A stretch of 64,000 bases of DNA from Haplodiscus bocki (lineage: Eukaryota). Location of the stretch: NCBI GenBank assembly GCA_965655095.1, contig OZ296648.1, forward strand, positions 54,622,001-54,686,000, in the 5' to 3' direction. This document shows, in pieces, positions 33,826 through 57,059 of the stretch. Numbering within the stretch: the first letter of the stretch is position 1; every line of letters starts with the position of its first letter. The notes beneath the pieces were generated by a model. It made no database searches. It was not told where the DNA came from and saw only the letters and a program-made list of their open reading frames with translations. The position numbers and the translations under genes are program-made.

Positions 33826-34559
33826 TTCAACTAAAGTTGGTAATAGTGGGAGATGAATCGAGTTCCCCAAATAACAGTAAAACTCAAGAGAGCAGCAAAA
33901 CTTTCGCATTAGGGAGGCTCGAGATTAGGCATGCAGAAAATCGCGTTACGTGAGAAAAAAATATAGATTGGAAACGTTATGAACACGATGATGAGGATTT
34001 AATGTTAATTCTATTTTTGGATCTTTCCTGTTAACTGTTAGTTAAGTTTAGAGCTCCTGCAGTGGGGGGGGGGGGGTTAACAGAGAAGCTCCCTATTTTT
34101 GAAATCTTGTTGGTATCAGCGCCTGACTGGACGAAGAAATCGAAATGAAGAGAAATCAAAAAGGCTGAAGCGAAAGAAAACAGACTAGAATGACGTTTGT
34201 TTGCTTCCTTACACTTGAGTGAGAAGTGGGAAATTAGCGTCAGGAAGGTAAACCTCAACGCATAACGCCCAGTAACAATCGAGCTACTCAAATTTGACTA
34301 CTCAGGATACTTGGTCTACGCGTTTTTAGCGAATAATTCAATTCAAACCGCTGTAAACATTGAGAACATCAAATTTATCAATTCAAGGACATTTTAAATT
34401 CACTGGAAGTAAACAATTTACAAATGAATATAATATAAATATGCAATCAAGATTTCAGCAATTCAACACTTTCCCAAACCGAAAACACCACTCACGCTTG
34501 GGGCTGACATTTTCTACATTTTTATATCTGCTGTAAGTCCAGGTTACCTTTAATTGAAA

Positions 34560-35564
34560 TTAGAACCACCAAAACCTCAAGTAAATTACACAAGAAATTA
34601 AAATGAAAAAGCCGACACCAAATTTGACGTAATGAGTCCAAGAGTTTAAATTTCTAGCACTTTTGGAATACTTTGCTGACATCATTGAAAGGTTGCTAGC
34701 TTTGTCATCTAAGTCGGACAGCTTGTCTCCTCGCTGGAGAACGTCGTCAATGTTCTGCACCATGACTCTTTGGATATCTATGCAAAAAACAAAAGTTCGA
34801 AAATGAAAGCATGGTCAAAACTACAATTATAGAATCATTGAACCGAACAGAACTGACAGCATATATTTCATCAGTTGTTTCAACTGACCAGAAAGTTCAT
34901 TATAGCAACAAATAAGCAATTAAAACTATACCCAATTTAGGTTAAGCGACGCCATTAGTACTTCTGTCCCTCTACACGAAGTTTTTGAGCATAACCCACA
35001 ACCAAAAAGACATTGTTTTCAATCCAACCTATTGTTCCCTTACCAACTTTTGGTCAAAAAAGGGTGGTCCGCAGAACTAACGAACTAATAACGCTGTAAG
35101 AAGAGATTTAAAAGAGGTAGTTCACCTTGCAATTCATTACTGACATTGACAAGCTGTCGCTTCCCTCTGGCAGATCCATCGGAAAAGGCTTTTTTCTGTC
35201 TCTGTATGTAGGTGTCGAATTCGATAAAAGCGTAAGGCCTGGCGACAGAATTGTATCTTTGAGAATATTGCGTGATGAACTGAGACGATATGTTTTCTAG
35301 AAACTCATAGGCTAGGCGCTTGGAATAGGTTCGTTCACAGAGACAGAGGAAGCAAACATCGTTGGTGATAAGGTAATGGAATAGATAAGGCCCGCTCTCT
35401 AGGGAACATTGTTGCGGTGATCTCGGACTGAGTTTCTTCAGTAGCTGTTTCGCTTGATTCTGATACTCAACTAGTTCTCGACCAGTTTTCTCGTTTTCCA
35501 GGGTGATAGAAGCTGCCAGTGGCAAGCCATCGGTTACACGTCCAATGAAAGTTAATAAAATCAT
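34560..35564 (-). CDS. SEC22B: Vesicle-trafficking R-SNARE SEC22 (longin + SNARE + TM), copy A, 218 aa
   Basis: Exons 35564-35126 and 34777-34560. Motifs MILLTFIGRVTDGLPLAAS, RPYAFIEFDTYIQ, DIQRVMVQNIDDVLQRGDKL and a C-terminal TM ending YLRFWWF. Confidence 0.95.
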
Positions 35565-36170
35565 TCAAACCGAAAAAAACGAACAGTTCAGATAGAGCTA
35601 AAGTCTCCATCAATCTTTGAACTTGTCGTCAGTTCAGCTTCTCAGAATCTTCATTTTTTTCTGGCAAAACACAGAAATTGGATTGAAACTGTGCAAATCA
35701 TTTAAAAAAATTCAAGCAAAAACAGCAGCCTTTCTCTTAATTGGCAATTTCAAAGTATTTGCGGGAGAATAATAATTTTTCACAAAAACAGCACCTAGGA
35801 CTACAGCAATATTGTAGCAATAAAATAATGTTATTGCAGGATAAATATATTATATACGCAGTATCATAAAAACCAACTAAGCGAACACATAGTTTGGGTA
35901 AATCAAATAATATACACTGAAAAACCTATCGAGATATCCTAATACTCAGTAGGTCGATAAAAGTCTGAAGCACCAAAAACACTTCATAGCTTAATTGATT
36001 TTAGCAGCTAAAATTGAGCACATTTAAATATGGAAAAAGCTTTATTGCAATTTCATTTACCAAATGAAGAGTGAGGGCGAACTTTAGATCTAAAACTTTA
36101 GACGTGGCTATTCTGCATATAAAAATTCTGCATTGAAAACTTGGGGTGAGGAGACTAAAGTTCGTTCTTT

Positions 36171-39040
36171 TCAATTTTCGAATTCCGCCGCTGAGTAATC
36201 ATCGTAGTCTTCAATTTTTGCATCGTAATTGGCAATCTTTTCTCCATCTACATTATAGTAGAAGTCAGGGGGTGGCGGGGGAGGCACCGCATGTCCACTG
36301 GGGTTTGGCCTAGTTACGTCACGACCACCCGAGGGCTTACCAGGCTTCTCTTGCTGCTGTTTCTGCTTCTCTTTGTGCTTCCTCAACAAGTCCTTCTTTC
36401 GTTGCAACTCGTAAAAATCTTTCTTCAACTGCTCTTCATATTTCTGCAGCTCTTCTTCCGAGAACTGAGGTTCTTCAGGAACTCCTACAAAAAAAGGAAC
36501 TTGCACACTTAGTAGATCTGCGGAAAATTGAATCAAAATGATTGGCTAGAGTTCAAATTAATCCCATGGAAAAATCGAATTATATTTCCAAATATCAATT
36601 TTGTAGACCAATTTAAAATTTAAGAAGCGTATTAAGCTCCTTAGAGCAGACTTACATGATAGAAAAGGGGAACATTCTATGTATTCTGACACTCTAATAA
36701 AGAACCAATTTTTTATAGCCGGTAAGTTCGAGATTGGCCTTTTGCAGATTGTATTCTCATCAATTGAATGGCGCCGTTTTATTCCAAAACTTGCCAGAAA
36801 CTTGAAAACGATAAATAAAAAACCGTCACGTGAAGATGCACGTACCTTTCCATTCTTCGTCTTCGTTAAATTTGGAGCTATCTGTGAATTCACGAAACTC
36901 CTTCCAAGAGACACTTTTGTCTCCATCTTTGTCCACTTGACTCATTATATGTTCTCGCATTCTTGCTCGCTCTTCCGACATGAGTTGTTCTAACTCGTCA
37001 GCTTCATAATTCGCCTTAGCCGCATTGTTGTACATCTTTTCCACTTCTTTCTGGAACATGGCTTCCAACTCCAACTGATCTGCCAACAAAAGGAATACTT
37101 ATTCCTATAGCCAGTATTACGAGAAGAACACATGTTTGGCTATAATTGATAACTTATCAAGATTGCCAAATCATCAACATTTTGTTCACGGTGAAAAGGT
37201 TAACGATCTGTCCGTGAGTAATTTCCAACAGTTTTCTGTATTCATCAGTGTATTGTACATGATACACGAATAGAAGAAAACTATACGAAATTATTGGAAA
37301 ACATGCATGTCCGCACGAGATACAAAATTTATTTCTGCATGTATGTCCCTGTCTCATTGATTCATTGTTTTGCACGAACTTCTAACCCAGTCTTTCATCC
37401 CCATTTGTGTCATGTAGCTGGAAGAACGTCTTTGGGTTGAAGGTGTCCCTGTCTAAGTGATCTTGCTCCTCCCATACATCTTCTAAACTCTTTTTATGTC
37501 CAGGCTCGTGCACCTTCGGGTGTTGCTTCAACTTCTCCCGCTGTGCGTTGAACTCTCGTTCCTTCTGAGCTCTTTCTTCAGGTGTCAACTTCTCGATGTG
37601 CTTTCTTCTATCCAACTCTCGTTTCATTTCATGCTGCTGAAATTGCCGTCTTCGACGCTCGTCTATTTCATCTGTTTGCAAAGTTTCAGTTTCTAACTGA
37701 TGTGCACTTATTGTTAATTTAATATTCGATGATTTTTTACAGAAGATGTATTTTTTTATACTGACTTTGATTTGCATAATTGATTTTTCAAAATTTGTTA
37801 GTTAAAAATATATAAAACACTCTTCAGGAACATTTCGGGCACCAAGATTTTAACCAAAGTTTTTAGGCAAGAACGGCTACGTAAGCTGTAAAACATTCTA
37901 ACGATATCTTAATTTTTTCCGGGATTTTTCCGCCGAAGATCTGAGATAAATAATGAGCATGCAATAAATTATGAGTCTTAACGCAAGACATACATCATCG
38001 AAATTCAACGTCGTCTTGAAGTGGGGAATTTAATTTAGGACCCTGACGGAGGAGGACCGTGGAAAAGACTGACTAATAGATATTGATCGTTAACTTGAGG
38101 TCGACTTTTGAGTAGATTAGAGAAGTTATAAAGTAAAAAGATTCGTTAAAAATAGTGAAAAAATAACCTAAATCCGCTGTTGCTTTTCTAATGAGCGCCT
38201 GCAGATCATCTTTTGTAAAACTGTCGGCGAACTTGGGATCTTTAGGTTGGGACAAATGAGCCGTCATTGTTTTGATATATTCTGGGTGCACTGCCCTCTC
38301 TTTGTTTTCAAGTCTGGAGAGTTCTCGGAAATCTGTTCTTAACCGGTCCACTTCTCTTCTCTTGGCTTCGTCTAATTTCGTTCGTACAGTGTGATGAGCA
38401 AATTCTAGTTCGTCGGCCAGTTTTCCTGTCATGACATCTTCTCGGGTTGCATTGTTCATTTTCGCTTTGAATGATGGGTCGTCTTGTAGAATGCGAGTTA
38501 CTTCTCTGAGGTACTTTTCATAGGCCAGTTCAGCTATATCGTCGGGTAGAGTGTCACCTGTTTCAGGTTCCAGATGTTTTTCCGGTGTTGGTGGATTTGG
38601 ATTTAATCTTCCTACAAAACAGACATGAGAAAGCTTGCCGAACATTTCAAAAACAAAAACTACCTGGCTTTGATTCAATACACAATTTTAAATCAAGATT
38701 CTGAGAGGTTTAAACAATCGTCTACGATATCATAAATTTTTGCTATAGTTCAATTAGTATTACACGCTATAGCATCTACTCGGAGAATAGAGAATGTTTT
38801 ATGCTCACGAAATCTCTTTCATACGTTATGAACCAATAAAAAAAACTGGCGCCAGAAAGTTTTTAACTAACCTGGATGAGGTGGAGGAGGACCTCGAGGA
38901 ACATGCCTTATATTAGGATTGTCTGCATGCATCTTTGTGATGCGTCTAGAGTCAACTGGCTGCGGTAAATAGAGGGCATTGCAGAGAAAAAGTAGTAGAA
39001 ACAAATAACTCCTCATGACAACAAACGATGATGATGACAT
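36171..39040 (-). CDS. NUCB: Nucleobindin (NUCB1/2-like) secretory/Golgi EF-hand protein, copy A, ~481 aa
   Basis: Exons 39040-38872, 38611-38168, 37671-37387, 37079-36846, 36484-36171, all phase-1 GT-AG. Signal peptide, YEKYLREV, VRTKLDEAKRREVDRLR, FNPKTFFQLHDTNGDERLDQLE (EF1), VDKDGDKSVSWKEF (EF2). The start could instead be ATG 39016. Confidence 0.93.
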
Positions 39041-42000
39041 CTCGTCGAACGAGTCGATGCTCACTCAGCTGAAACCCTCAGCTACTACCAATCCCACTTT
39101 TTGGCACAAAAATGCATAAAATACCTAAAAAAATGATTAATTAAGCAAGAACGGCGTGGGATTTCCTCTGCAACAAATAGAAGACAACCAATTCTCAACT
39201 GTACACATCTCAAAACTACATGCTTCAACTCATGAAATTACACGCAACTCAAGAAAATGACCTTTTTGAAGCTTCAGAGAAAAGTGCGCAATTACTGACC
39301 CCTTTTCATCGTGTATTCAAAGAGTTGAATTCTCCGACACGAACAGAGTGGCTCGAAATTCAAGAGGGATTACGAGAGAAAGACTTGGAACTAACTAGTG
39401 CATGACCAAAAACTTGAAAACAACAAACCAACCCACTAAATCGTTTTCAAAAAAAGCAGAAGCAAGATGGTCAAATTTAGGGAAGATCGAGCATTTCTAA
39501 AAACTCGAAACAATCTACATGGAAAGGCCCCAAAAATGCAAGTCACTGCTAGGCTTCAAGCACTGAGAAAACCGAAAAAAAAGAAGAAAACTAAGTTTAC
39601 GTTAAGCTTACTTAGTAAAGGATTTCACTTTCTTAAGTCGAATTAACCTGAAACTAGAGGCACACGACCAAAGAAACTATTTATCATCGCTAGACAATTT
39701 ACACGCCGTTTGGAACAATTTTGTGAAACAAAAATTTTGGGTGTGAATTCTTTTCATTTATCGTGCAATTGGTAGATTTTATGCTAGGAGCGGCCCAAAG
39801 TAGACGCCACCCGTATGGCCCAAAATATCCATGGTTTTCCTTCATTTTTGAAATATCGTGTCTTTTCAGAGAAAAAATTTGGCATAGCCGTGTTTTTTTA
39901 GTAAAAAAATTGTCTCAGTTTAGTAGAATGACTCATAGTTACGATATATACTTTGTGTGAAAGTTCTTATTTGAAAGACCTTTGGTATAGGTCTTCGCAG
40001 AAATATTTTGGGTATGTGGAGAAAAGGTATCATGCAGAAATTTTGTGCTTAATTTCCAACATTTTTCTGAAGTAAATAAGTTCTTTTCCCGTTTCCGGCC
40101 TGTAATCAATGGGACCCCTCAGCGGCTTTATAAAACAAAACCCATTGCAATAGTTGTGTGCTTTTACCCGACTAAAAACAGGCCAAAAGTCCAACCTGAA
40201 AGCAAACTGCACGTAAAGAAGCTTTCAAATGTTTTGTCGTAAAGCATCACGCTTAAAATTTTTGAACGCGTTCTAGATTTTATGCATTGAGCATTTAAGG
40301 GCCTGAGTGTATTGCAAACTTCCAAATTTCACCCTTCCAACAATTAGACATGCAAATTAAGCCTTTTAAAGTGAGTGATTCTTTACAAAAAACCTTGGAG
40401 AAATGATCACTTTTCTCAATTGTACCGCCTGGAAAACCTGCCTGTAAAAATGGACTGAAATCAAATTGAACATCGAGCAACTAAGTGATTCGTGCTGCCA
40501 CTTCAGCCCAGAATTACGAAAAAAAACAAAAAAATCGTCTCTCGAATTAATTAGATTATCTACTGAAGTTTCAAAAGAACCACTGTAGCTGATTTCAGTC
40601 AAAAGGGAGCGTAATATTAGGCCATGTATACGTGAAAAACTTTTTGACAAGTCGCGACGCTGAATGAAGGAATATTTACAGCAAAGCCAGAGCACATGAA
40701 GGAATTCAGTGAGATTGTGATTTTAGAAGAAAATGATGCGAGTTGGGAACGCGCATAAAAAACGAAAGCGGTCTCCAATACACTTCGCTTGCTCTCTCGC
40801 ACAAAAAATATTCATGCAGAAATTACAGATTACTGAGTTCCTCAAGAAGATGAAAAAAACTACTTTTCAACTTAACACAATTTGATCTAGCACTGCTCTT
40901 GGCTTTCGATTTCAAGAAGCGGGAAATAAGATTCGAATTACATTGGCAAAATTGAGAATACTTGAATCAAGAACTTGAAATCCAAGAGTAAATAGTGATT
41001 TCAGTCTAGCCAGGGGAAGTAAATGTAAACGAATCAAAATTCGTAGGAAATTATCTGACTTCACTTTGTCGCTCACCCAACCGGTCAAGAATGCGTTTGC
41101 GAAGGACGCTCGAATATGCGACGCAGAGAAAAGAGAAAGTAAAATCTATAGGCCTTAAGCCTACAAGCTCAATGCCAAGTAATGTAGGCATACTACAATA
41201 GTCCTTTTCATGAAGTAGATACTACTATAGTCCTTTTCAGTAAAAACTAAAGCGCCGAACAAAAAACTGAACATCAAATGAATTATGTTCCTTCTGTTTA
41301 TGAAATATGAGCGGAAAGAAATGCTAGTCTGTAGAAAATATGTTTCTTCAAAAGAATCATTGGAAACCATTTTAACAAAAAGGCGGAGCGGAACTTCGCC
41401 ACACGTTCTGACTAGGAGTTGAGAACCCAATCAAAAATACAGATTACAGTCAAAGGTCCTCAGAAACCCCATGACCGCGGACCACATGATTCGAACATTT
41501 AGAAACACTACAGCAGCTGTCCATCAACATTCTTTCCATCGAATTGCTTTAAGTACTTGTCACAGGGTCTCACTCAAAAACTTGATCTGTCAATCATGCC
41601 TTTTAAGATTACGCCATTTCACAGCCCGATTTGTAAAAAAACAACGCCAAAATGAAAAACTACCTGTCAAAAAGAGGTCGTTTTTGACCGTTTAAACTAC
41701 ACCACTAAATTATTGGAAGACGTCAAAAAACGTTTCAAACGAGATAATAAAGCTGGGTATAAGCTGTTTCCATTACACATTCTTCTTTTCAGTATTTCAA
41801 AAAAAAGGTAAAACCCAGCTTCACTCAAACCAATTAATATACGATTGACTTTTGGAACAATTTAGGTTGAAAAGAAGGAAATAAAACACAGTGTTCTAAG
41901 AGAAATCGATTGTCTAAATATAAGAGCTGTCATAGGAGAAATTGCAAAATTAATATTCCCTCTCATTTTTTCTGTCGCCAAAAAACAGAACTTCACATCC

Positions 42001-45000
42001 CGAAGGTTGCCAAAATGACCATCGACAAATTTAATTTCTCTGCAATCCACACCACGTTTTCTAACTTCTTATTGCAATTTTCCTGAAACGTTGCACATCT
42101 ATTAATCGTATATTCGTTTGGTATTCTCTTTTCATGCCCTCCTAGCGTACTGTAAGGAAACCCCCCCCCCCAACGATTAAAAATTATCTTCTCTGCTTTG
42201 CCAAAACTCACTGGCACCTAAATTGAACGCAGAGGTGAAATTTAGTTCGCAAACATTTGCCAAAGAAATCACAGCTCAAAATGATTCAAAAACAACAAAA
42301 ATGAAATCGCATTCCACCAACACAATCTCAACACACCTCGAATACAATGAAAGCTCTTTCGCGATAAAATCATTAAATAGACCATCCGCGGTACTCCACA
42401 CAATATGGTCGCTCTGGGTCATTTCATTGCATTTCCGAAATAAAGCGTAGCAAATTTCTCAGATTGAAGATTTTCTCTCATTTGAAAGTTCGAACAGAAA
42501 GAAAAAATGGCTCTGGCTTTTCCGCTTTAGCGGTCGAAAAAACTTTCCGTTCAATAGGATGACAAACTGCAATTGATACTACAACCGAACAAAAAATTGC
42601 AAAAGCATAAGAAAAACAATGTAAAATGTAAAGTTTCACTTTGAACAATACGATCAGGTTGCGGTGAAAATAGGCATATTACGTCATTAGTTGGAACAAA
42701 ACAGTTTACGTCATTCTCAAAATTGGTAGTAGCCTACGTAATAGCAGCGGATTTACTGAACTGACAGAACATCAAACTAGGCCAGTGTCCGATTGCAGTT
42801 ATGTCCGGTCTGCAAAAACCAATTCCGAAACAATTCTTCGATCCAAGTGTAACACACATTCAAAACTTCGTTTCATAACACTAGTGAGACTAGGGAAACC
42901 AGTTCACTGTTAAGAAAACGAACTTTGAGTGTCTACTTTTACTTACATCAGTGCAAACGTAAGTAAAGAAAGCGAAATTTTAAACTGGGAAAAAGTTGGG
43001 AGGCAAAAAAGAATATTTTTGCTATTAACCAAACGTCCAATTATTTAGTGATGCAAGCAGGGCGCAACAACTACGATCAGATTGATGGATTCCAGGAAAA
43101 TCATTCTGAACGAAAGATGCAAGTTTCACTTTCTCGCCTTTCCAGTGTCATTAAAAAAGACGTCTCAATGGAAAAGGACAACGGACAAAACATTGTACTC
43201 ACCAGACGTTCTAGGAGAAATCAATATGGCGGCTGATTGCTGCAAGGCAAATGGTTGTAACAACAGAGCGCACCTTCCAAGAGAGTTACATACTTAACTT
43301 TGTTGACTTTCTGACTGAAAATAAAAAGTTTTCAGAAAAAAATAGTGGAATCCACCAGTGTTGCTCCAGAGAGCCTGAACGCAGCACATACTTGAAATTT
43401 GAGAAAGTTAGCGCTAGCTGGACGCGATCGGACAATTTTTTCGAGAAAAACTGTAAACGAAAGCAGAAAGTAAAAACACGTTTCATTATTGAAATATAAC
43501 CTAACACCTTTGTCATAAAGGAACATATGAGACAATCCGAGCAACTTTGCAGAACACTGTTACTGACCGGTGAAAAACAAATTTTTTTGCAAATGCAAGT
43601 TGGTCAGAGATTGCTCGTCTCCAGAACTCGAAATCGACGAAAAAATACCAAGCAGGTTCAATGGGAAGAGACTAGCTGTAAAAGAGCTGAAGGCAAATTA
43701 TCAGAATAATATTAAAACTACTTTTAAGGACCGGTCAAAAAAGATCGTGCCGATCTTTTTCGCGATAGAATACTTTCCATTCCAGCCACTTCTAGGCAGG
43801 AAGTAGCCGAAGAGGAGCAAAATGGACGCAATGGGACCATTAGGTCCCAATAAACAACGCTCTTAAAGGAAAGCGCGAAGATGGAGCATCTTTGGTTTTT
43901 CAAAAACGAATTAACAACGTTCGTGAGAGAAGCACAAAATGGTAAATCCCAGCTATTGTTCTCTTGCTCCGGTTAGCACGCCCACTTCAGCTGTAGGGAC
44001 GCAATCGGACGCTTAGCTCCCAAAAAAATGCTAAGCGAAAGATGCAATTCAAGAACTTTATCAAATTGCTAAATATAACTTAATTTCCAAGCGAAAAAAA
44101 CCAACCCAGGCCCTAATCAGAACTCTTAGCTTGCGATTAGTGAAATATTTGCTTGACGAATGCAATGGTATCGAATGCTTGAAAAACAACCATGAAGGAA
44201 GACGTTGAAAAGAAGTTTGCAGGTTCCAAAACGTCATTTGCGTTGAGTTACCCATTTATTCACAATCGCTTCACAAGCATGTACAGGAAAAAAGCGTGAA
44301 AATGTATTTAGAGCAAAACGAGAGCACATGAACAAACTTGGTAGTCCCTCGTGAGCAGTGGTGTCAAGAATTTTATCAAAAATGTCAATTTCTACCGGAC
44401 GGAAAATACAAATGTCATTTGCTATACACACGATTAGCTAAACTCAACTCGGTATAAAACGGGCAAAAATACGCTTGGCAAACACTTGCGAAACTTACTT
44501 CTACATGAATAATTTCTACATTCTGTAGACTTCACTCCCACAGACGGAAGCACCAAATATTCTGCGACTCAAAATCAACCTGCTTTTGTATGCTCAATGG
44601 AATGGAGAGCTGCCCAATAACAGCGTTGTGAGCTGAATAGGACTGGCACTGCTTAAATGAACGCTTCTGTAGCAAATACACCGGAATAGCACAGAAATGA
44701 GGAATATGTACTGTCGGAAGTGCCGCCGAAAAATTAGGAAAGCACAGTCTGATACAACACCAATCTCCCAGAGAACTGGAAGTCGATTGAGCACTGGATG
44801 GCCTCAGTCTGAACAATAGTAATCAAAAAACACACTTCTGGCGAAAAACTCACGAAAAACTCAATAATTTCCCCTTGAAAATTCAGATTTTAAGAAGAAA
44901 AGTAGCTAATCTAAACGCCACTGCTACTTCGCAGATCATCCAAGAAAAGAGAAGTCGAATTAACAATGGATGGCCCCAATTGAACAGCTGGTTGTCAAGA

Positions 45001-45224
45001 ATATTACCACTAGAGTAAAAAAAATATCATTATTTATGTCCAACAGAATCTCAAGACACAGAGCATTTGATTGAGTCGGAATATCGATCGGGTTCGAATC
45101 AATCAACGATTTTTTCTCACAAAATCTCATTTCAACATCCATAAAGATTACATTAACCAAAATGGAAGTTAGTTTAGTGCACTCGCATCAAAAATTGATA
45201 CGACTAGCACTGTAAATAACCAAC

Positions 45225-45905
45225 TTGCTGCATTTTCCAAGAAGCCGCATAACATCGAAATACTTGTCTCGAAACGGAGGGTCGATGGCAACGACACTTT
45301 TCTGATCAAATACAGCTCCGATTTCAACACCTGCTGGTAGTAAATTTGGCCCGAACTGAAACAAATCACCGCAGTACAAATGCATTCGATTGTCGTCTGT
45401 TTTGAAGACAGTCCCAAAACCTTCAATGCTTTGTGCAGTGAGGCTTAAGTTATTTTCTTGTCCAACTAACTGGAGGGCCTTCTCACTGATCTCCAGACCT
45501 GAACAGCGTCACGGATGTACAAAAACATCGTCGGGTCAATCTTTTGATCAGGGACATCAAAGCTAACCTATAACAGTATACCCAAGATTGTAGAAAAACA
45601 ATAGGTCGACCGACTTTCCACAGAGCGGCACAAAAATAGCCAGCTGTTTATCTTTCGGAAGAAAGTCATCTGACATTAGAGTAAGGTGTTCGTGTACAAC
45701 AGGGAAGTGGAAAGCGGGGTTGTCACTCTCGTTCCACATTTCATGCCACTGGTCTAAATGAGCCATAACAATCTGTAAAACCAACCAAAGCTATACCGTC
45801 TCGCTCAATTCCAGCCAAAACAAGACATGAAGCAGAAATACTGATTCTTTACGGTAGAGACATTAATGTGTAAAACATCTGACGCTCAGCAATGCCGCTT
45901 ACCAT
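45225..45905 (-). pseudogene. TPMT: Duplicated TPMT exons 1-3 without their own terminal exon
   Basis: Exons 45905-45903, 45772-45568 and 45498-45225 look identical to copy A. The duplication boundary (42399) lies inside the last intron, so exon 4 was not copied. Confidence 0.8.
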
Positions 45906-46802
45906 GTGCTGATAATTACAATTATGTTAAGTACTTTTGTACATTAAAGCATCATAGAGAATACTGTATGTGCTCTTATAGTGTCTGAGAATTTTGAGTC
46001 AAATATTTGATGGCGTCATCCAAAGTGTTCTTCAAACCAATCACGTGTCAGTGATGTCAGAGTATCACTTCAACTAAAGTTGGTAATAGTGGGAGATGAA
46101 TCGAGTTCCCCAAATAACAGTAAAACTCAAGAGAGCAGCAAAACTTTCGCATTAGGGAGGCTCGAGATTAGGCATGCAGAAAATCGCGTTACGTGAGAAA
46201 AAAATATAGATTGGAAACGTTATGAACACGATGATGAGGATTTAATGTTAATTCTATTTTTGGATCTTTCCTGTTAACTGTTAGTTAAGTTTAGAGCTCC
46301 TGCAGTGGGGGGGGGGGGGTTAACAGAGAAGCTCCCTATTTTTGAAATCTTGTTGGTATCAGCGCCTGACTGGACGAAGAAATCGAAATGAAGAGAAATC
46401 AAAAAGGCTGAAGCGAAAGAAAACAGACTAGAATGACGTTTGTTTGCTTCCTTACACTTGAGTGAGAAGTGGGAAATTAGCGTCAGGAAGGTAAACCTCA
46501 ACGCATAACGCCCAGTAACAATCGAGCTACTCAAATTTGACTACTCAGGATACTTGGTCTACGCGTTTTTAGCGAATAATTCAATTCAAACCGCTGTAAA
46601 CATTGAGAACATCAAATTTATCAATTCAAGGACATTTTAAATTCACTGGAAGTAAACAATTTACAAATGAATATAATATAAATATGCAATCAAGATTTCA
46701 GCAATTCAACACTTTCCCAAACCGAAAACACCACTCACGCTTGGGGCTGACATTTTCTACATTTTTATATCTGCTGTAAGTCCAGGTTACCTTTAATTGA
46801 AA

Positions 46803-47807
46803 TTAGAACCACCAAAACCTCAAGTAAATTACACAAGAAATTAAAATGAAAAAGCCGACACCAAATTTGACGTAATGAGTCCAAGAGCTTAAATTTCTAG
46901 CACTTTTGGAATACTTTGCTGACATCATTGAAAGGTTGCTAGCTTTGTCATCTAAGTCGGATAGCTTGTCTCCTAGCTCGAGAACGTCGTCAATGTTCTG
47001 CACCATGACTCTTTGGATATCTATGCAAAAAACAAAAGTTCGAAAATGAAAGCATGGTCAAAACTACAATTATAGAATCATTGAACCGAACAGAACTGAC
47101 AGCATATATTTCATCAGTTGTTTCAACTGACCAGAAAGTTCATTATAGCAACAAATAAGCAATTAAAACTATACCCAATTTAGGTTAAGCGACGCCATTA
47201 GTACTTCTGTCCCTCTACACGAAGTTTTTGAGCATAACCCACAACCAAAAAGACATTGTTTTCAATCCAACCTATTGTTCCCTTACCAACTTTTGGTCAA
47301 AAAAGGGTGGTCCGCAGAACTAACGAACTAATAACGCTGTAAGAAGAGATTTAAAAGAGGTAGTTCACCTTGCAATTCATTACTGACATTGACAAGCTGT
47401 CGCTTCCCTCTGGCAGATCCATCGGAAAAGGCTTTTTTCTGTCTCTGTATGTAGGTGTCGAATTCGATAAAAGCGTAAGGCCTGGCGACGGAATTGTATC
47501 TTTGAGAATATTGCGTGATGAACTGAGACGATATGTTTTCTAGAAACTCATAGGCTAGGCGCTTGGAATAGGTTCGTTCACAGAGACAGAGGAAGCAAAC
47601 ATCGTTGGTGATAAGGTAATGGAATAGATAAGGCCCGCTCTCTAGGGAACATTGTTGCGGTGATCTCGGACTGAGTTTCTTCAGTAGCTGTTTCGCTTGA
47701 TTCTGATACTCAACTAGTTCTCGACCAGTTTTCTCGTTTTCCAGGGTGATAGAAGCTGCCAGTGGCAAGCCATCGGTTACACGTCCAATGAAAGTTAATA
47801 AAATCAT
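46803..47807 (-). CDS. SEC22B: SEC22 copy B (open frame, QR->EL at the SNARE zero layer, N->S)
   Basis: Exons 47807-47369 and 47020-46803; VLELGDKL replaces VLQRGDKL. Confidence 0.88.
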
Positions 47808-48413
47808 TCAAACCGAAAAAAACGAACAGTTCAGATAGAGCTAAAGTCTCCATCAATCTTTGAACTTGTCGTCAGTTCAGCTTCTCAGAATCTTCATTTT
47901 TTTCTGGCAAAACACAGAAATTGGATTGAAACTGTGCAAATCATTTAAAAAAATTCAAGCAAAAACAGCAGCCTTTCTCTTAATTGGCAATTTCAAAGTA
48001 TTTGCGGGAGAATAATAATTTTTCACAAAAACAGCACCTAGGACTACAGCAATATTGTAGCAATAAAATAATGTTATTGCAGGATAAATATATTATATAC
48101 GCAGTATCATAAAAACCAACTAAGCGAACACATAGTTTGGGTAAATCAAATAATATACACTGAAAAACCTATCGAGATATCCTAATACTCAGTAGGTCGA
48201 TAAAAGTCTGAAGCACCAAAAACACTTCATAGCTTAATTGATTTTAGCAGCTAAAATTGAGCACATTTAAATATGGAAAAAGCTTTATTGCAATTTCATT
48301 TACCAAATGAAGAGTGAGGGCGAACTTTAGATCTAAAACTTTAGACGTGGCTATTCTGCATATAAAAATTCTGCATTGAAAACTTGGGGTGAGGAGACTA
48401 AAGTTCGTTCTTT

Positions 48414-51276
48414 TCAATTTTCGAATTCCGCCGCTGAGTAATCATCGTAGTCTTCAATTTTTGCATCGTAATTGGCAATGTTTTCTCCATCTACATTATA
48501 GTAGAAGTCAGGGGTTTGCGGGGGAGGCACCGCATGTCCACTGGGGTTTGGCCTAGTTACGTCACGACCACCCGAGGGCTTACCAGGCTTCTCTGGCTGC
48601 TGTTTCTGCTTCTCTTTGTGCTTCCTCAACAAGTCCTTCTTTCGTTGCAACTCGCAAAAATCTTTCTTCAACTGCTCTTCATATTTCTGCAGCTCTTCTT
48701 CCGAGAACTGAGGTTCTTCAGGAACTCCTACAAAAAATGGAACTTGCACACTTAGTAGATCTGAGGAAAATTGAATCAAAATGATTGGCTAGAGTTCAAA
48801 TTATTCCCATGGAAAAATCGAATTATATTTCCAAAAATCAATTTTGTAGACCAATTTAAAATTTAAGAAGCGTATTAAGCTCCTTAGAGCAGACTTACAT
48901 GATAGAAAAGGGGAACATTCTATGTATTCTGACACCCTAATAAAGAACCAATTCTTTATAGCCGGTAAGTTCGAGATTGGCCTTTTGCAGATTGTATTCT
49001 CATCAATTGAATGGCGCCGTTTTATTCCAAAACTTGCCAGAAACTTGAAAACGATAAATAAAAAACCGTCACGTGAAGATGCACGTACCTTTCCATTCTT
49101 CGTCTTCGTTAAATTTGGAGCTATCTGTGAATTCACGAAACTCCTTCCAAGAGACACTTTTGTCTCCATCTTTGTCCACTTGACTCATTATATGTTCTCG
49201 CATTCTTGCTCGCTCTTCCGACATGAGTTGTTCTAACTCGTCAGCTTCATAATTCGCCTTAGCCGCATTGTTGTACAACTTTTCCACTTCTTTCTGGAAC
49301 ATGGCTTCCAACTCCAACTGATCTGCCAACAAAAAGAATACTTATTCCTATAGCCAGTATTACGAGAACACATGTTTGGCTATAATTGATAGCTTATCAA
49401 GATTGCCAAATCATCAACATTTTGTTCACGGTGAAAAGGTTAACGATCTGTCCGTGAGTAATTTCCAACAGTTTTCTGTATTCATCAGTGTATTGTACAT
49501 GATACACGAATAGAAGAAAACTATACGAAATTATTGGAAAACATGCATGTCCGCACGAGATACAAAATTTATTTCTGCATGTATGTCCCTGTCTCATTGA
49601 TTCATTGTTTTGCACGAACTTCTAACCCAGTCTTTCGTCCCCATTTGTGCCATGTAGCTGGAAGAACGTCTTTGGGTTGAAGGTGTCCCTGTCTAAGTGA
49701 TCTTGCTCCTCCCATACATCTTCTAAACTCTTTTTACGTCCAGGCTCGTGCACCTTCGGGTGTTGCTTCAACTTCTCCCGCTGTGCGTTGAACTCTCGTT
49801 CCTTCTGAGCTCTTTCTTCAGGTGTCAACTTCTCGATGTGCTTTCTTCTATCCAACTCTCGTTTCATTTCATGCTGCTGAAATTGCCGTCTTCGACGCTC
49901 GTCTATTTCATCTGTTTGCAAAGTTTCAGTTTCTAACTGATGTGCACTTATTGTTAATTTAATATTCGATGATTTTTTACAGAAGATGTATTTTTTTATA
50001 CTGACTTTGATTTGCATAATTGATTCTTCAAAATTTGTTAATTAAAAATATATCAAATACTCTTCAGGAACATTTCGGGTACCAAGATTTTAACCAAAGT
50101 TTTTAGGCAAGAACGGCTACGTAAGCTGTAAAACATTCTAACGATATCTTAATTTTTTCCGGGATTTTTCCGCCGAAGATCTGAGATAAATAATGAGCAT
50201 GCAATAAATTATGAGTCTTAACGCAAGACATACATCATCGAAATTCAACGTCGTCTTGAAGTGGGGAATTTAATTTAGGACCCTGACGGAGGAGGACCGT
50301 GGAAAAGACTGACTAATAGATAATGATCGTTAATTTGAGGTCGACTTTTGAGTAGATTAGAGAAGTTATAAAAAGATTCGTTAAAAATAGTAAAAAAAAT
50401 AACCTAAATCCGCTGTTGCTTTTCTAATGAGCGCCTGCAGATCATCTTTTGTAAAACTGTCGGCGAACTTGGGATCTTTAGGTTGGGACAAATGAGCCGT
50501 CATTGTTTTGATATATTCTGGGTGCACTGCCCTCTCTTTGTTTTCAAGTCTGGAGAGTTCTCGGAAATCTGTTCTTAACCGGTCCACTTCTCTTCTCTTG
50601 GCTTCGTCTAATTTCGTTCGTACAGTGTGATGAGCAAATTCTAGTTCGTCGGCCAGTTTTCCTGTCATGACATCTTCTCGGGTTGCATTGTTCATTTTCG
50701 CTTTGAATGATGGGTCGTCTTGTAGAATGCGAGTTACTTCTCTGAGGTACTTTTCATAGGCCAGTTCAGCTATATCGTCGGGTAGAGTGTCACCTGTTTC
50801 AGGTTCCAGATGTTTTTCCGGTGTTGGTGGATTTGGATTTAATCTTCCTACAAAACAGACATGAGAAAGCTTGCCGAACATTTCAAAAACAAAAACTACC
50901 TGGCTTTGATTCAATACACAATTTTAAATCAAGATTCTGAGAGGTTTAAACAATCGTCTACGACATCATAAATTTTTGCTATAGTTCAATTAGTATTACA
51001 CGCTATAGCATCTACTCGGAGAATAGAGAATGTTTTATGCTCACGAAATCTCTTTCATACGTTATGAACCAATAAAAAAAACTGGCGCCAGAAAGTTTTT
51101 AACTAACCTGGATGAGGTGGAGGAGGACCTCGAGGAACATGCCTTATATTAGGATTGTCTGCATGCATCTTTGTGATGCGTCTAGAGTCAACTGGCTGCG
51201 GTAAATAGAGGGCATTGCAGAGAAAAAGTAGTAGAAACAAATAACTCCTCATGACAACAAACGATGATGATGACAT
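48414..51276 (-). CDS. NUCB: Nucleobindin copy B (open frame, EF-hand 1 D->G and other substitutions)
   Basis: Exons 51276-51108, 50847-50404, 49911-49627, 49322-49089, 48727-48414 with intact splice sites; HGTNGD versus HDTNGD in copy A. Confidence 0.88.
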
Positions 51277-54057
51277 CTCGTCGAACGAGTCGATGCTCAC
51301 TCAGCTGAAACCCTCAGCTACTACCAATCCCACTTTTTGGCACAAAAATGCATAAAATACCTAAAAAAATGATTAATTAAGCAAGAACGGCGTGGGATTT
51401 CCTCTGCAACAAATAGAAGACAACCAATTCTCAACTGTACACATCTCAAAACTACATGCTTCAACTCATGAAATTACACGCAACTCAAGAAAATGACCTT
51501 TTTGAAGCTTCAGAGAAAAGTGCGCAATTACTGACCCCTTTTCATCGTGTATTCAAAGAGTTGAATTCTCCGACACGAACAGAGTGGCTCGAAATTCAAG
51601 AGGGATTACGAGAGAAAGACTTGGAACTAACTAGTGCATGACCAAAAACTTGAAAACAACAAACCAACCCACTAAATCGTTTTCAAAAAAAGCAGAAGCA
51701 AGATGGTCAAATTTAGGGAAGATCGAGCATTTCTAAAAACTCGAAACAATCTACATGGAAAGGCCCCAAAAATGCAAGTCACTGCTAGGCTTCAAGCACT
51801 GAGAAAACCGAAAAAAAAGAAGAAAACTAAGTTTACGTTAAGCTTACTTAGTAAAGGATTTCACTTTCTTAAGTCGAATTAACCTGAAACTAGAGGCACA
51901 CGACCAAAGAAACTATTTATCATCGCTAGACAATTTACACGCCGTTTGGAACAATTTTGTGAAACAAAAATTTTGGGTGTGAATTCTTTTCATTTATCGT
52001 GCAATTGGTAGATTTTATGCTAGGAGCGGCCCAAAGTAGACGCCACCCGTATGGCCCAAAATATCCATGGTTTTCCTTCATTTTTGAAATATCGTGTCTT
52101 TTCAGAGAAAAAATTTGGCATAGCCGTGTTTTTTTAGTAAAAAAAATGTCTCAGTTTAGTAGAATGACTCATAGTTACGATATATACTTTGTGTGAAAGT
52201 TCTTATTTGAAAGACCTTTGGTATAGGTCTTCGCAGAAATATTTTGGGTATGTGGAGAAAAGGTATCATGCAGAAATTTTGTGCTTAATTTCCAACATTT
52301 TTCTGAAGTAAATAAGTTCTTTTCCCGTTTCCGGCCTGTAATCAATGGGACCCCTCAGCGGCTTTATAAAACAAAACCCATTGCAATAGTTGTGTGCTTT
52401 TACCCGACTAAAAACAGGCCAAAAGTCCAACCTGAAAGCAAACTGCACGTAAAGAAGCTTTCAAATGTTTTGTCGTAAAGCATCACGCTTAAAATTTTTG
52501 AACGCGTTCTAGATTTTATGCATTGAGCATTTAAGGGCCTGAGTGTATTGCAAACTTCCAAATTTCACCCTTCCAACAATTAGACATGCAAATTAAGCCT
52601 TTTAAAGTGAGTGATTCTTTACAAAAAACCTTGGAGAAATGATCACTTTTCTCAATTGTACCGCCTGGAAAACCTGCCTGTAAAAATGGACTGAAATCAA
52701 ATTGAACATCGAGCAACTAAGTGATTCGTGCTGCCACTTCAGCCCAGAATTACGAAAAAAAAAACAAAAAAATCGTCTCTCGAATTAATTAGATTATCTA
52801 CTGAAGTTTCAAAAGAACCACTGTAGCTGATTTCAGTCAAAAGGGAGCGTAATATTAGGCCATGTATACGTGAAAAACTTTTTGACAAGTCGCGACGCTG
52901 AATGAAGGAATATTTACAGCAAAGCCAGAGCACATGAAGGAATTCAGTGAGATTGTGATTTTAGAAGAAAATGATGCGAGTTGGGAACGCGCATAAAAAA
53001 CGAAAGCGGTCCCCAATACACTTCGCTTGCTCTCTCGCACATAAAATATTCATGAAGAAATTACTGATTATTGAGTTCCTCAAGAAGATGAAAAAAACTA
53101 CTTTTCAACTTAACACAATTTGATCTAGCACTGCTCTACAGCAGCCAAGTAATTTTCAATTTCCAAATTTTTCACAAACCGTAGTAATTAGCACGCTAAA
53201 TTTTTCAAATTCTGTTGCCATTTTGTCCTCCTGGAACAACATTGAAGTTTGAAACGGCACTTCCAATTCAAGGCCTACCGTTGAACTTGAGTGATTTTCT
53301 TGTCAAAACATTTTCTGTTGTCTTAAAAATTCACTTCATGGCAGAAGACAAGAAAATTCACTGTATGGTAAACGACATTTTCATCCGAAAAACTTGCCGC
53401 CTATGAGACGACAACCTTCAATCATCACATACCCATGCCTTGTGCTAAAATCCCAATAGTATGCCGTGATTACCACTAGCCACCAAAGGGCGAACGTTCG
53501 CGAAGCTGCCGCATGGTGTAAAGAGACAGAAATTCTGAACAAGGCCGCAGCCTAAGACAGGGGCTCACCCAACCAAAAAGAAAGCTCATTAGAAGGCCAT
53601 TCAAACTCGCTTTCATTCATTACTCAGAAATGCGTCGCTGTGGAAATATTTAAGTTTGATTTCTTCAACACACTATTCGGAAGGAATTTCACAAAAACCT
53701 TCAGGTTAATGGGGGTTAAAAAATATTTCATTCTTGAATTTTGGTAAAAAATCGCCCAAGTCATTATTTTTGTTTCTTTACTATCCAAAAATGATATGTC
53801 AAACAGAAGCGAAGCTAGGCTGCGCAAAACTTGCGCCAACGGAACATTAGTGAACAAACCCAACAAGTATAACTATTTTAAAAGGATCAGGGTACAACAA
53901 AAGCTGCTGATTAAACGATTCCAAAAATATTTAATTAGCTGAATTAATTCTCAAACTTTCACACAAGTGTAATCAGTACGAAATGGTTATATGCAAAGAT
54001 TTATGACTCTATAATATTTCATTAGCTTCATATTTCAAACGAAAACACTGATTCTGA

Positions 54058-54130
54058 CGAGACCGTGGCACAGTGGTAAAGCATGCGACTGCGACGCTAA
54101 AGCGCCAGGTTAGAGCCTAGGCCAGCCACT
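54058..54130 (+). pseudogene. tRNA-like pseudogene or SINE head
   Basis: A-box TGGCACAGTGG, degenerate B-box GGTTAGAGCC, tRNA-like spacing; acceptor stem does not pair. Confidence 0.55.
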
Positions 54131-57059
54131 TCTTGTTCAAATCTTGTGTTAGTTGTGAACAGAGCGGGAAAAAATTCGAAGACTGTAATTTAACACTTGC
54201 TTACGCAAGTATAAAGATTTACAGATCAAAAACGCAAAAAAAACTAGACGTCCTAGAACAATACAAGGCGTCCCAAAAAACGTTACATGATTCTGCTTCT
54301 GGCTCAATATCTAAACACAGAAGCGAAGCTGTGCTTCGCAACAGCTGCGCCGACGGACTACTAGCAAACAAATCGACTAAAAATAACTGATTTTCGAAGG
54401 GGCCACGATACTACGAATACTACTTATAACAAATGTACAGAAACTCAATTAATTCTTCAAGACTTATATACAAGAAACGGTGTAATATTTCATTCGGTTG
54501 ATATTTCAAATTAAATTACCGATTCTCAAGAGGTAATGCGACAGTCAGTAGAGGATGCAACTGGACAGTACAAGAATTGGTGTTAATGTTATTGCTAAAT
54601 GTGCGTTGATGGCCGTAGGCACAGAAAATGGCCTATTTCTCAAAAAAGTCGAAATCCACCAAATCATTGATAATGAAACGTCCTCCGCGAAAACACATAT
54701 TTAAACAAGTCAAATCGCAGCCAACCTTCAGAATGTTAAGGAATATACCCCGGTCAAAAAGTTTACGGAAAAAATAGGTGAAGTTTTTGCGTTACTGTCT
54801 GAGAAACAAGTCGGTCTTCGAAGTCGAAAATTTTGTTATGTTTTCATTTTACAATGTTTTTAATGGTTGCTTGGTACCAGCAGATAAGGATTGCTTAACA
54901 CATCATCTACAAATGGTGATGACAACACCGAAATTTTTGACATAGCTTTACAAAACGTCGTTACGGACAGTAAAGTCCGTAAAACAAAATAACCTTTGGC
55001 TTAGATATTAAACAAGCCGAGAAAGGCCAAGCCGCCCGTAAGGCTCAAGTTACTCGTAGGGGTGACCCTTTGGCGTTGAGAAAACTTTAGGCTCTTTCAA
55101 AAATTCAGTATTTCAAAGGTTTTCAGAGTGCGAGAGAAAATTCATAATAGTACTCTTTGCCACTTCACGGAAGCACTGTGAAATTCAGTTGCAAAACATA
55201 TGGGCTCCGCAACATAGGTGTGGGGTGTCACAAAAACCATTGGGATTGGCCGTTGCAAAACACTGATTAGGAAATATAAAATTTTGACACGCAGGGGGTA
55301 TCACAAAAACGTTTTGATACTTGTCTACTTGTCTGCTCAAAATTTCTGGATTGAAAAGAGGGTATGGCAAATTTTACCGTTTATTCTGCTTCGGAAAAAA
55401 ATGAATAGTGCAAAGGGAGTATCACAAACTTTTGATATCTGGTTTCACAAATATTTACGGCTCTCTGGTGGTTTATTTCGTGGTCTGGAGAAAAAGGTAA
55501 ACGTAGTCCCTATTCTATTTTTGGCTTTCGATTTCAAGAAGCGGGAAATAAGATTCGAATTACATTGATAAACTTGAGAATACTTGAATCAAGAACTTGA
55601 AATCCAAGAGTAAATAGTGATTTCGCTTTAGCCAGGGGAAGTAAATGGAAACGAATCAAAATTCTTAGGAAATTATCTGACTTCACTTTGTCGCTCACCC
55701 AACCGGTCAAGAATGCGTTTGCGAAGGACGCTCGAATATGCGACGCAGAGAAAAGAGAAAGTAAAATCTATAGGCCTTAAGCCTACAAGCTCAATGCCAA
55801 GTAATGTAGGCATACTACAATAGTCCTTTTCATGAAGTAGATACTACTATAGTCCTTTTCAGTAAAAACTAAAGCGCCGAACAAAAAACTGAACATCAAA
55901 TGAATTATGTTCCTTCTGTTTATGAAATATGAGCGGAAAGAAATGCTAGTCTGTAGAAAATATGTTTCTTCAAAAGAATCATTGGAAACCATTTTAACAA
56001 AAAGGCGGAGCGGAACTTCGCCACACGTTCTGACTAGGAGTTGAGAACCCAATCAAAAATACAGATTACAGTCAAAGGTCCTCAGAAACCCCATGACCGC
56101 GGACCACATGATTCGAACATTTAGAAACACTACAGCAGCTGTCCATCAACATTCTTTCCATCGAATTGCTTTAAGTACTTGTCACAGGGTCTCACTCAAA
56201 AACTTGATCTGTCAATCATGCCTTTTAAGATTACGCCATTTCACAGCCCGATTTGTAAAAAAACAACGCCAAAATGAAAAACTACCTGTCAAAAAGAGGT
56301 CGTTTTTGACCGTTTAAACTACACCACTAAATTATTGGAAGACGTCAAAAAACGTTTCAAACGAGATAATAAAGCTGGGTATAAGCTGTTTCCATTACAC
56401 ATTCTTCTTTTCAGTATTTCAAAAAAAAGGTAAAACCCAGCTTCACTCAAACCAATTAATATACGATTGACTTTTGGAACAATTTAGGTTGAAAAGAAGG
56501 AAAAAAAACACAGTGTTCTAAGAGAAATCGATTGTCTAAATATAAGAGCTGTCATAGGAGAAATTGCAAAATTAATATTCCCTCTCATTTTTTCTGTCGC
56601 CAAAAAAACAGAACTTCACATCCCGAAGGTTGCCAAAATGACCATCGACAAATTTAATTTCTCTGCAATCCACACCACGTTTTCTAACTTCTTATTGCAA
56701 TTTTCCTGAAACGTTGCACATCTATTAATCGTATATTCGTTTGGTATTCTCTTTTCATGCCCTCCTAGCGTACTGTAAGGAAACCCCCCCCCCCCCCCAA
56801 CGATTAAAAATTATCTTCTCTGCTTTGCCAAAACTCACTGGCACCTAAATTGAACGCAGAGGTGAAATTTAGTTCGCAAACATTTGCCAAAGAAATCACA
56901 GCTCAAAATGATTCAAAAACAACAAAAATGAAATCGCATTCCACCAACACAATCTCAACACACCTCGAATACAATGAAAGCTCTTTCGCGATAAAATCAT
57001 TAAATAGACCATCCGCGGTACTCCTCGGATTCTCTATTTGGTGACCGGTTGAATAAGTC

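What the first reader, a model, noticed from the sequence alone, without database searches (positions are those of the whole stretch)
46960..46980. Duplicated SEC22 has lost the R-SNARE zero-layer arginine
Seen: copy A reads CAG CGA GGA GAC AAG CTG (QRGDKL) and copy B reads GAG CTA GGA GAC AAG CTA (ELGDKL). That is three substitutions within 18 bp of an otherwise nearly identical gene with intact frame and splice sites. Established: this Arg forms the 3Q:1R ionic layer and is strongly conserved in SEC22/VAMP. Inference: copy B is either decaying or encodes an altered, possibly inhibitory, SNARE with a hydrophobic zero layer.
Basis: partly seen in the sequence, partly recalled or inferred. Interest (0 to 1): 0.7.

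Follow-up and report, generated by a model that had tools for sequence, protein, structure and literature searches.

The report
Young SEC22 duplicate losing conserved residues
One of two nearly identical neighbouring copies of the vesicle-fusion gene SEC22 has lost a normally invariant arginine, but the gene next to it in the same copy carries equally damaging changes, so this looks like a spare duplicate starting to decay rather than a new kind of fusion protein.

Summary
Two intact two-exon SEC22b-type genes lie on the minus strand inside a 12.2 kb head-to-tail duplication that is 99.2% identical. Copy B reads ELG where copy A reads QRG. The arginine is the SNARE zero-layer residue: it aligns with VAMP2 R56 and is present in 116 of 116 homologues.

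The coding sequences differ at five positions, not three: Q161E, R162L, N191S and two silent changes.

A third, single-copy version of the locus on another contig of the same assembly (L003, about 97% identical) carries QRG and N191. All four exon-2 changes therefore arose in copy B.

One independent per-run assembly (X1) contains the three ELG letters, so a consensus error is unlikely.

The neighbouring nucleobindin gene in copy B has eight missense and no silent changes. One removes the first Asp of an inferred EF-hand loop. In total, lineage B has 11 missense to 1 silent change, against 4 to 11 in the other lineages (Fisher p=0.0014).

Best reading: the whole B block is a young, redundant duplicate under relaxed selection. 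SEC22-B is probably a weakened R-SNARE at the start of pseudogenisation.

Not settled: whether B is transcribed (no RNA data exist), and whether A and B are true paralogues or mis-joined haplotypes. The sharp junctions favour a real duplication. Interest is low to moderate.

The parts
35126..35564 (-). SEC22 copy A, coding exon 1 (Met1 to first base of codon 147; longin domain)
   Evidence: Translation and GT donor; Pfam Longin PF13774 E=9.5e-28
34560..34777 (-). SEC22 copy A, coding exon 2 (SNARE motif, TM anchor, TAA stop); zero-layer codon CGA at 34731-34733
   Evidence: AG acceptor and translation; Pfam Synaptobrevin PF00957 58.9 bits; alignment to SEC22b and VAMP2 chains
47369..47807 (-). 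SEC22 copy B, coding exon 1; same protein sequence as A (one silent difference at 47490)
46803..47020 (-). SEC22 copy B, coding exon 2 with Q161E (46977-46979), R162L (46974-46976, CTA), L166 silent (46962-46964) and N191S (46887-46889)
   Evidence: Pfam Synaptobrevin 52.3 bits; all four changes are B-derived relative to L003
30163..40898 (.). Duplicated block Y, copy A (TPMT-like gene, SEC22-A, nucleobindin-A)
   Evidence: Self-BLAST: 99.2% over 10,748 columns, 65 mismatches, 8 gaps; Pfam TPMT and NUCB1_N
42399..53136 (.). Duplicated block Y, copy B (TPMT-like gene, SEC22-B, nucleobindin-B)
40899..42398 (.). Spacer E_B between the two Y copies; a 99.07% copy of 55521-57024; sharp junctions at 40898/40899 and 42398/42399
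53137..55520 (.). Segment U, which follows Y_B (and follows Y in L003) but is missing after Y_A
55521..57024 (.). Element E_C, the parent or sister copy of E_B; an older partial copy lies at 28644-29412
48417..50923 (-). Nucleobindin copy B (the exons seen here), with eight B-derived missense changes and no silent ones, including D to G at the first Asp of the DTNGD loop (site 49650)
   Evidence: Codon comparison of A, B and L003; NUCB1_N E=8.2e-31 and weak EF-hand hits on copy A exons. That DTNGD is an EF-hand loop is inferred from knowledge of the nucleobindin family

Best explanation
A roughly 12.2 kb segment carrying a TPMT-like gene, SEC22 and nucleobindin was recently duplicated head to tail on one haplotype of an animal genome. 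The closest named relative is the acoel Symsagittifera roscoffensis. The other haplotype (contig of L003) still has a single copy. With copy A doing the essential work, the genes in copy B are no longer protected by purifying selection and are collecting missense changes at the neutral rate. In SEC22-B these are Q161E, R162L and N191S. The first two, together with a silent change, probably arose as one clustered mutation event. SEC22-B is still an open, spliceable gene whose intron and flanks, 0.67 kb upstream to 1.6 kb downstream, are identical to those of copy A. If it is transcribed it would make a longin R-SNARE with leucine in place of the zero-layer arginine. By analogy with yeast sec22-3 (R157G, temperature sensitive) and other zero-layer mutants, that protein would probably still enter four-helix bundles but work less well. 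Shown here: the substitutions, their direction, the invariance of the Arg, and the missense excess across the B block. Inferred: redundancy as the cause, reduced function, and real paralogy.
For: Sequence and frame are intact, with five coding differences. The zero-layer identity rests on alignment to SEC22b and VAMP2 chains. R is present in 116/116 homologues, and Q161 and N191 in 114/116 each. The Pfam Synaptobrevin score falls from 58.9 to 52.3 bits. The outgroup L003, from a second contig of the same ENA assembly, has the A-type letters at all four exon-2 sites. In lineage B, SEC22 has 3 missense to 1 silent change and nucleobindin has 8 to 0. In lineages A and C the total is 4 to 11; Fisher p=0.0014, and 11 of 12 is compatible with neutrality (p=0.18). 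Under purifying selection typical for SEC22 (omega 0.05-0.1), three or more missense changes would have probability 2e-4 to 1e-3. The ELG letters occur in the Logan contig of run X1, while runs X2-X4 show the A-type letters. The duplication junctions are sharp with 0-1 bp of homology, and E_B/E_C (0.93%) diverge about as much as Y_A/Y_B (0.79%), as expected for one real duplication event. Literature: sec22-3 is R157G (PMC3861085, Table 1), and an R to Q change in yeast Sec22 causes growth and transport defects (PMC5937789).
Against: There is no stop codon, frameshift or splice defect in SEC22-B, so it is not yet a pseudogene in the strict sense. No RNA data exist. B-derived changes outnumber A-derived ones 44 to 16 even outside coding sequence, and they are clustered and rich in transversions (17 Ts to 27 Tv). 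Plain neutral decay of one of two equal copies does not predict this. Most B-specific letters, including N191S and all nucleobindin missense sites, are absent from the four Logan contig sets. Those contigs drop minority paths, so this is weak evidence. Paralogy was not shown by reads spanning the junctions. Zero-layer substitutions are often tolerated: most Sso1 Q224X alleles (PMC2600744) and fly Ykt6 R164Q (PMC5937789). Loss of function is therefore not certain.
Confidence: 0.6

Rival explanations
1. A and B are not paralogues. They are two haplotypes (alleles) of a single-copy locus, chained head to tail by the assembler through the repeated element X/E. The ELG form would then be a segregating or clonal-lineage deleterious allele masked by a good allele.
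For: The A-B divergence of 0.8% is in the range of heterozygosity. The assembly looks like a metagenome-style HiFi assembly that keeps haplotypes apart: a third version sits on another contig. A repeat flanks the block on both sides. Logan contigs collapse A and B into one mosaic path. The share of the C-type haplotype in bubbles is 0.32-0.45, which does not separate one third from one half.
Against: Both novel junctions (Y_A|E_B and E_B|Y_B) are sharp and lie outside shared repeat sequence. A graph assembler would need reads carrying them. E_B/E_C and Y_A/Y_B have matching divergence. Contig L003 already accounts for a second haplotype, and A-, B- and C-type letters all occur in both samples.
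Confidence: 0.2
2. SEC22-B is a functional, selected variant: an R-SNARE with a hydrophobic zero layer that acts as a regulatory or inhibitory SNARE, or in a specialised fusion step.
For: The reading frame, splice sites and flanks are intact and identical to copy A. All five A/B differences in the 3.3 kb between 32931 and 36237 fall in the 657-nt coding sequence (a post hoc observation). Hydrophobic zero layers still allow complex assembly in vitro (Scales et al. 2001, as cited in PMC2600744).
Against: The neighbouring nucleobindin copy shows the same missense-only pattern, which argues for block-wide relaxation rather than selection on SEC22. Coding sequence is not enriched for differences over the block as a whole (about 14-15 of the 65 substitutions; my estimate of a ~25% coding fraction). 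None of 116 homologues tolerates a non-Arg residue here. There is no expression evidence.
Confidence: 0.07
3. The ELG codons, or many of the B-specific letters, are assembly or consensus errors in the B copy.
For: B-specific changes are clustered and transversion-rich. Most are not seen in any of the four Logan contig sets.
Against: The three letters at 46962/46975/46979 occur together in the Logan contig of run X1. Several other B-specific clusters (44210-44218, 44850, 48936/48954) occur in X1 or X4. The word shares of the runs (0.97/0.94/0.94/0.92) match what the laid contigs show. HiFi errors are mainly homopolymer indels (general knowledge).
Confidence: 0.05

Closest known systems
SEC22b / yeast Sec22p (longin R-SNARE of ER-Golgi traffic, type R.I)
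   Same: Longin domain, synaptobrevin-type SNARE motif and C-terminal membrane anchor. Exon 1 is 82% identical to the Symsagittifera roscoffensis SEC22b-B-like protein. Copy A has the canonical VLQRG zero-layer motif.
   Different: Copy B has Leu at the zero layer, Glu instead of Gln before it, and Ser instead of the conserved Asn just after layer +8. None of the 116 homologues compared shows the Leu.
Yeast sec22-3 (R157G), a laboratory zero-layer mutant
   Same: Loss of the same zero-layer arginine in the same protein family. It is a temperature-sensitive allele (PMC3861085, Table 1; I did not read the original description by Sacher et al. 1997).
   Different: The yeast allele was isolated in a screen and is the cell's only copy. 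Here the change is natural, is R to L, comes with two other missense changes, and sits beside an intact copy.
Young tandem gene duplicates under relaxed constraint (early non-functionalisation)
   Same: A near-identical tandem copy, missense accumulation at the neutral ratio in two adjacent genes, and a wild-type copy retained.
   Different: There is no disabling mutation yet. The mutation load is asymmetric (44 to 16) and also affects non-coding sequence, which remains unexplained.
SEC22A/SEC22C and plant phytolongins (longins without a working SNARE motif)
   Same: Longin proteins related to R-SNAREs that have given up canonical SNARE function (PMC2779197 for phytolongins; SEC22A/C from general knowledge).
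   Different: Those are old, conserved families whose SNARE motif is absent or replaced. SEC22-B keeps a full motif with point changes and is less than 1% diverged from its parent.

Membership tests
SEC22-type longin R-SNARE | N-terminal longin domain | tested here: met
   PF13774 E=9.5e-28 on exon 1; the protein sequence is identical in A and B
SEC22-type longin R-SNARE | Synaptobrevin-type SNARE motif followed by a C-terminal hydrophobic anchor | tested here: met
   PF00957 scores 58.9 bits (A) and 52.3 bits (B), both above the 26.4 cutoff. The hydrophobic tail aligns with homologues
SEC22-type longin R-SNARE | Arginine at the zero layer (the R of R-SNARE) | tested here: not met
   Copy B has Leu162 (CTA). 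Copy A and L003 have Arg. 116/116 homologues have Arg, and the position aligns with the R of VAMP2 VLERD. Copy A meets this feature
Pseudogene (unprocessed, from duplication) | Disabling lesion: stop codon, frameshift or lost splice site | tested here: not met
   218-aa open frame, with ATG, GT, AG and TAA identical to copy A
Pseudogene (unprocessed, from duplication) | Missense-to-silent ratio at the neutral expectation, unlike the parent copy | tested here: met
   Lineage B 11:1 against lineages A+C 4:11, Fisher p=0.0014. 11 of 12 is compatible with neutrality, p=0.18. The counts are small and the nucleobindin exon borders are approximate
Pseudogene (unprocessed, from duplication) | Loss of expression | not testable with these tools
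   No RNA run holds the stretch. No full-length transcript-derived protein of this species is in the protein collection
True tandem segmental duplication | Two head-to-tail copies on one contig with novel junctions | tested here: met
   The same arrangement is on ENA contig ctg88697, which is the window's own source
True tandem segmental duplication | Independent reads spanning the junctions, and raised depth | not tested
   The single read-laying run covered 44000-49999 and returned contigs only, so neither the junctions nor copy number could be read
Inhibitory SNARE (i-SNARE) | Forms non-fusogenic complexes that compete with the cognate SNARE | not testable with these tools
   Needs biochemistry

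The most novel reading that the evidence does not exclude
SEC22-B is transcribed from its unchanged promoter and yields a natural R-SNARE with a hydrophobic zero layer. It enters ER-Golgi SNARE bundles and changes their fusion or NSF-driven recycling, which would make it a naturally arisen dominant modulator. The confinement of all local A/B differences to its coding sequence would then reflect selection.
Probability: 0.06. Interest if true: 0.6.

Novelty: new member of a known kind. Interest (0 to 1): 0.25.

Why it matters
If the main reading holds, this is a snapshot of the first steps of duplicate-gene decay. Two adjacent housekeeping genes in a copy less than 1% diverged have each already lost a signature residue while remaining open. 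That is useful as an annotation warning: SEC22-B and nucleobindin-B should not be counted as functional paralogues. It is not a new mechanism. Only if SEC22-B proved to be expressed and active would it offer a natural test of what the 3Q:1R layer is for.

Tried and rejected
1. RNA evidence. The look-up of sequencing runs returned four runs of one study, none recorded as RNA and all kept as contigs. Expression, strand and depth could not be read.

2. Copy number from Logan contig depth. Bubble shares of the third haplotype were 0.32-0.45, which does not separate 1/3 from 1/2.

3. Transcript-derived full-length proteins. The word search with exon 1 found only the window's own read-through ORF at 100%. 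The next hits were 85% and 82%. The exon-2 ORF is not a called gene in the loci, so I did not attempt an exact look-up of the ELG peptide.

4. A local donor for a templated multi-base change. No 12-mer covering the B-type letters occurs elsewhere in the window.

5. Mosaic or gene-conversion explanation for the excess of B-derived changes. B-derived and C-specific sites are interleaved at a scale of about 100 bp in the nucleobindin region, so simple tracts do not explain it. The 850 bp around SEC22 exon 2 has no C-specific sites, so polarity there rests partly on the deep conservation of Arg.

6. Earlier scan notes. Nothing on SEC22. One note records another recent tandem gene duplication in this genome.

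7. I did not use the large representative protein search or structure prediction, because the family assignment was never in doubt.

Full report
**What is at the coordinates**

The gene lies on the minus strand. The reverse complement of 34719-34736 reads CAG CGA GGA GAC AAG CTG. The reverse complement of 46962-46979 reads GAG CTA GGA GAC AAG CTA. Both copies form a two-exon gene of 218 codons:
- Copy A: 35564-35126 and 34777-34560.
- Copy B: 47807-47369 and 47020-46803.

ATG, GT donor, AG acceptor and TAA stop are identical in the two copies. Exon 1 is a longin domain (PF13774, E=9.5e-28). Exon 2 is a synaptobrevin-type SNARE motif with a hydrophobic tail (PF00957, 58.9 bits for A and 52.3 for B).

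The closest named protein is SEC22b-B-like of the acoel Symsagittifera roscoffensis, 82% identical over exon 1. The remaining hits are animal SEC22b proteins. The window therefore probably comes from a related acoel. I did not identify the species.

**Is the arginine the zero layer, and how conserved is it?**

Exon 2 aligns without gaps to solved SEC22b chains (VLQRGEAL) and to VAMP2 (VLERDQKL). The R in VAMP2 is R56, the zero-layer residue by established knowledge (Fasshauer et al. 1998, as described in PMC11344281 and PMC2600744).

Among 116 full-length homologues aligned with MAFFT, the position is Arg in 116. Q161 is kept in 114 and N191 in 114. VAMP2 has Glu at the position of Q161, so Q161E alone is mild.

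**All differences between the copies**

A global alignment of 30163-40899 against 42399-53137 gives 65 substitutions and 8 indels, 99.2% identity.

Within the coding sequence there are five differences: S106 silent, Q161E, R162L, L166 silent and N191S.

The intron, 0.67 kb upstream and 1.6 kb downstream carry no difference at all.

Three changes within 18 bp are not special to this site. Copy-B-specific changes are clustered throughout, with two further clusters of three within 20 bp.

**Direction of change**

An exact look-up of the exon-1 read-through product found three places in one ENA assembly (ERZ26859043). Two are on contig ctg88697, which is the window itself and holds both copies. 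One is on contig ctg88216 (L003).

L003 carries a single copy of the block, about 97% identical to both A and B. It shares the left flank and segment U on the right. It is most simply the other haplotype.

With L003 as outgroup, 44 substitutions are B-derived, 16 are A-derived and 196 are specific to L003. All four exon-2 changes are B-derived, and L003 encodes QRG and N191.

One caveat applies. In the 850 bp around exon 2, A and L003 are almost identical, so local polarity could be affected by exchange between them. The deep conservation of Arg settles the direction regardless.

**Is the ELG sequence real?**

Only four runs hold the stretch. They come from one study and two samples, none is recorded as RNA, and all are kept as Logan contigs.

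Laid on 44000-49999, each run gives one collapsed, mosaic contig over SEC22:
- Run X1 has the B-type letters at 46962, 46975 and 46979.
- Runs X2 and X3 (same sample as X1) and X4 (the other sample) have the A-type letters.

The runs' word shares (0.97, 0.94, 0.94, 0.92) agree with this. The three letters therefore exist together in raw reads of at least one run, which makes a consensus error unlikely.

N191S (46888) and all nucleobindin-B missense letters were not seen in any contig set. At B-derived sites the B path is the minority, because A and the third haplotype share the other letter, and contigs drop minority paths. This is not evidence of absence, but those sites remain unconfirmed.

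The third haplotype in the contigs (for example G, T, G at 44744, 44772, 44793) matches L003 and is present in both samples.

**The decisive context: the neighbouring gene**

The block also holds a TPMT-like gene (PF05724) and a nucleobindin gene (PF25434 NUCB1_N, E=8.2e-31, plus weak EF-hand hits).

A codon-by-codon comparison of A, B and L003 shows eight B-derived missense changes and no silent one in the nucleobindin exons. One is D to G at the first Asp of DTNGD (site 49650), which I infer to be the first calcium ligand of EF-hand 1.

Combined with SEC22:

| Lineage | Missense | Silent |
|---|---|---|
| B | 11 | 1 |
| A and L003 together | 4 | 11 |

- Fisher's exact test gives p=0.0014.
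- 11 of 12 is compatible with a neutral ratio (p=0.18).
- Three or more missense hits in SEC22-B would be very unlikely under normal constraint (2e-4 to 1e-3 for omega 0.05-0.1).

The loss of the zero-layer Arg is therefore one of many unconstrained hits across the B block, not a targeted change. The nucleobindin exon borders are approximate, and I left out sites near them.

**Is it a real duplication?**

The layout is X_A (28644-29412), a 750 bp segment, Y_A, E_B (40899-42398), Y_B, U (53137-55520), E_C (55521-57024).

Both novel junctions are sharp, with at most one shared base, and lie outside repeated sequence. E_B and E_C differ by 0.93%, close to the 0.79% between Y_A and Y_B.

This fits either of two histories:
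- one tandem duplication of Y-U-E followed by loss of U from the first unit;
- a replication event with two template switches.

An assembler chaining haplotypes through a repeat would not create such junctions without reads. I therefore favour real paralogy. I leave about 20% for mis-joined haplotypes, in which case ELG would be a masked deleterious allele.

**How it most likely works**

Copy A supplies the function. Copy B is redundant and drifting.

If SEC22-B is transcribed, as its unchanged flanks suggest, it would produce a membrane-anchored longin SNARE with Leu at layer 0. Published work bears on this in both directions:
- The same Arg mutated to Gly gives the temperature-sensitive sec22-3 allele (PMC3861085, Table 1).
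- R to Q in yeast Sec22 impairs growth and transport (PMC5937789).
- Many zero-layer substitutions are tolerated elsewhere: most Sso1 Q224X alleles support growth (PMC2600744), and fly Ykt6 R164Q rescues (PMC5937789).
- An all-hydrophobic zero layer still assembles in vitro (Scales et al. 2001, as cited in PMC2600744).

The most likely outcome is a weakened but assembly-competent SNARE. An inhibitory role is possible but has no support here.

**Unexplained**

- B-derived changes outnumber A-derived ones 44 to 16 (binomial p=0.0004), also outside coding sequence. They are clustered, and their transition-to-transversion count is 17:27, against 105:91 for L003-specific changes.
- All five A/B differences in the 3.3 kb between 32931 and 36237 lie in the SEC22 coding sequence. 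This was noticed post hoc, and there is no coding enrichment over the whole block.

**Verdict**

The "decaying copy" reading is supported and generalised to the whole block. The "inhibitory SNARE" reading is unsupported. This is an ordinary process caught at an early and rather clean stage.

Noticed in passing
window 42399-53137 against 30163-40899, with L003 as outgroup: Copy B carries 44 derived substitutions against 16 in copy A (p=0.0004). The B-derived ones are clustered (28% of gaps 20 bp or less, against 8% expected) and transversion-rich (17 Ts to 27 Tv). Simple neutral divergence of two equal copies does not explain this.
   Followed up: partly
window 48417-50923 (-), site 49650: Nucleobindin copy B has eight missense and no silent B-derived changes: Y>C, Q>P, P>Q, P>T, K>N, M>L, H>R, and D>G at the first Asp of the DTNGD loop. 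None of these letters was seen in the four Logan contig sets.
   Followed up: partly
window 32931-36237 and 45174-48480: All five A/B differences in this 3.3 kb lie inside the 657-nt SEC22 coding sequence. The intron, the flanks and the TPMT-like exons (33002-33547) are identical between copies. Patches with no A/B differences alternate with patches of 1.2-1.6% divergence, which suggests gene conversion between the copies.
   Followed up: partly
window 28644-29412, 40899-42398, 55472-57024; L003:16144-18271: A repeated element (X/E, up to 1.5 kb, preceded by U in some copies) flanks the duplicated block. It is present on both sides of the single-copy version in L003. It has no obvious coding capacity.
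   Followed up: partly
L003:1-1971: The other haplotype contig has a LINE-type ORF (Exo_endo_phos plus RVT_1) just beyond the block that the window lacks at that place.
   Followed up: no
window 19330-20097 (-): A 255-aa ORF with a reverse transcriptase domain (RVT_1, E=2.4e-24), probably a retroelement remnant.
   Followed up: no
window 5029-5855 and 7529-8368; 9949-10378; 11940-12546: A 0.84 kb direct repeat at 90% identity, and two short tandem arrays.
   Followed up: no
window 63090-63623 (-): An ORF with a weak RNF34/RFFL SAP-domain match (E=9.8e-05, below the Pfam cutoff).
   Followed up: no
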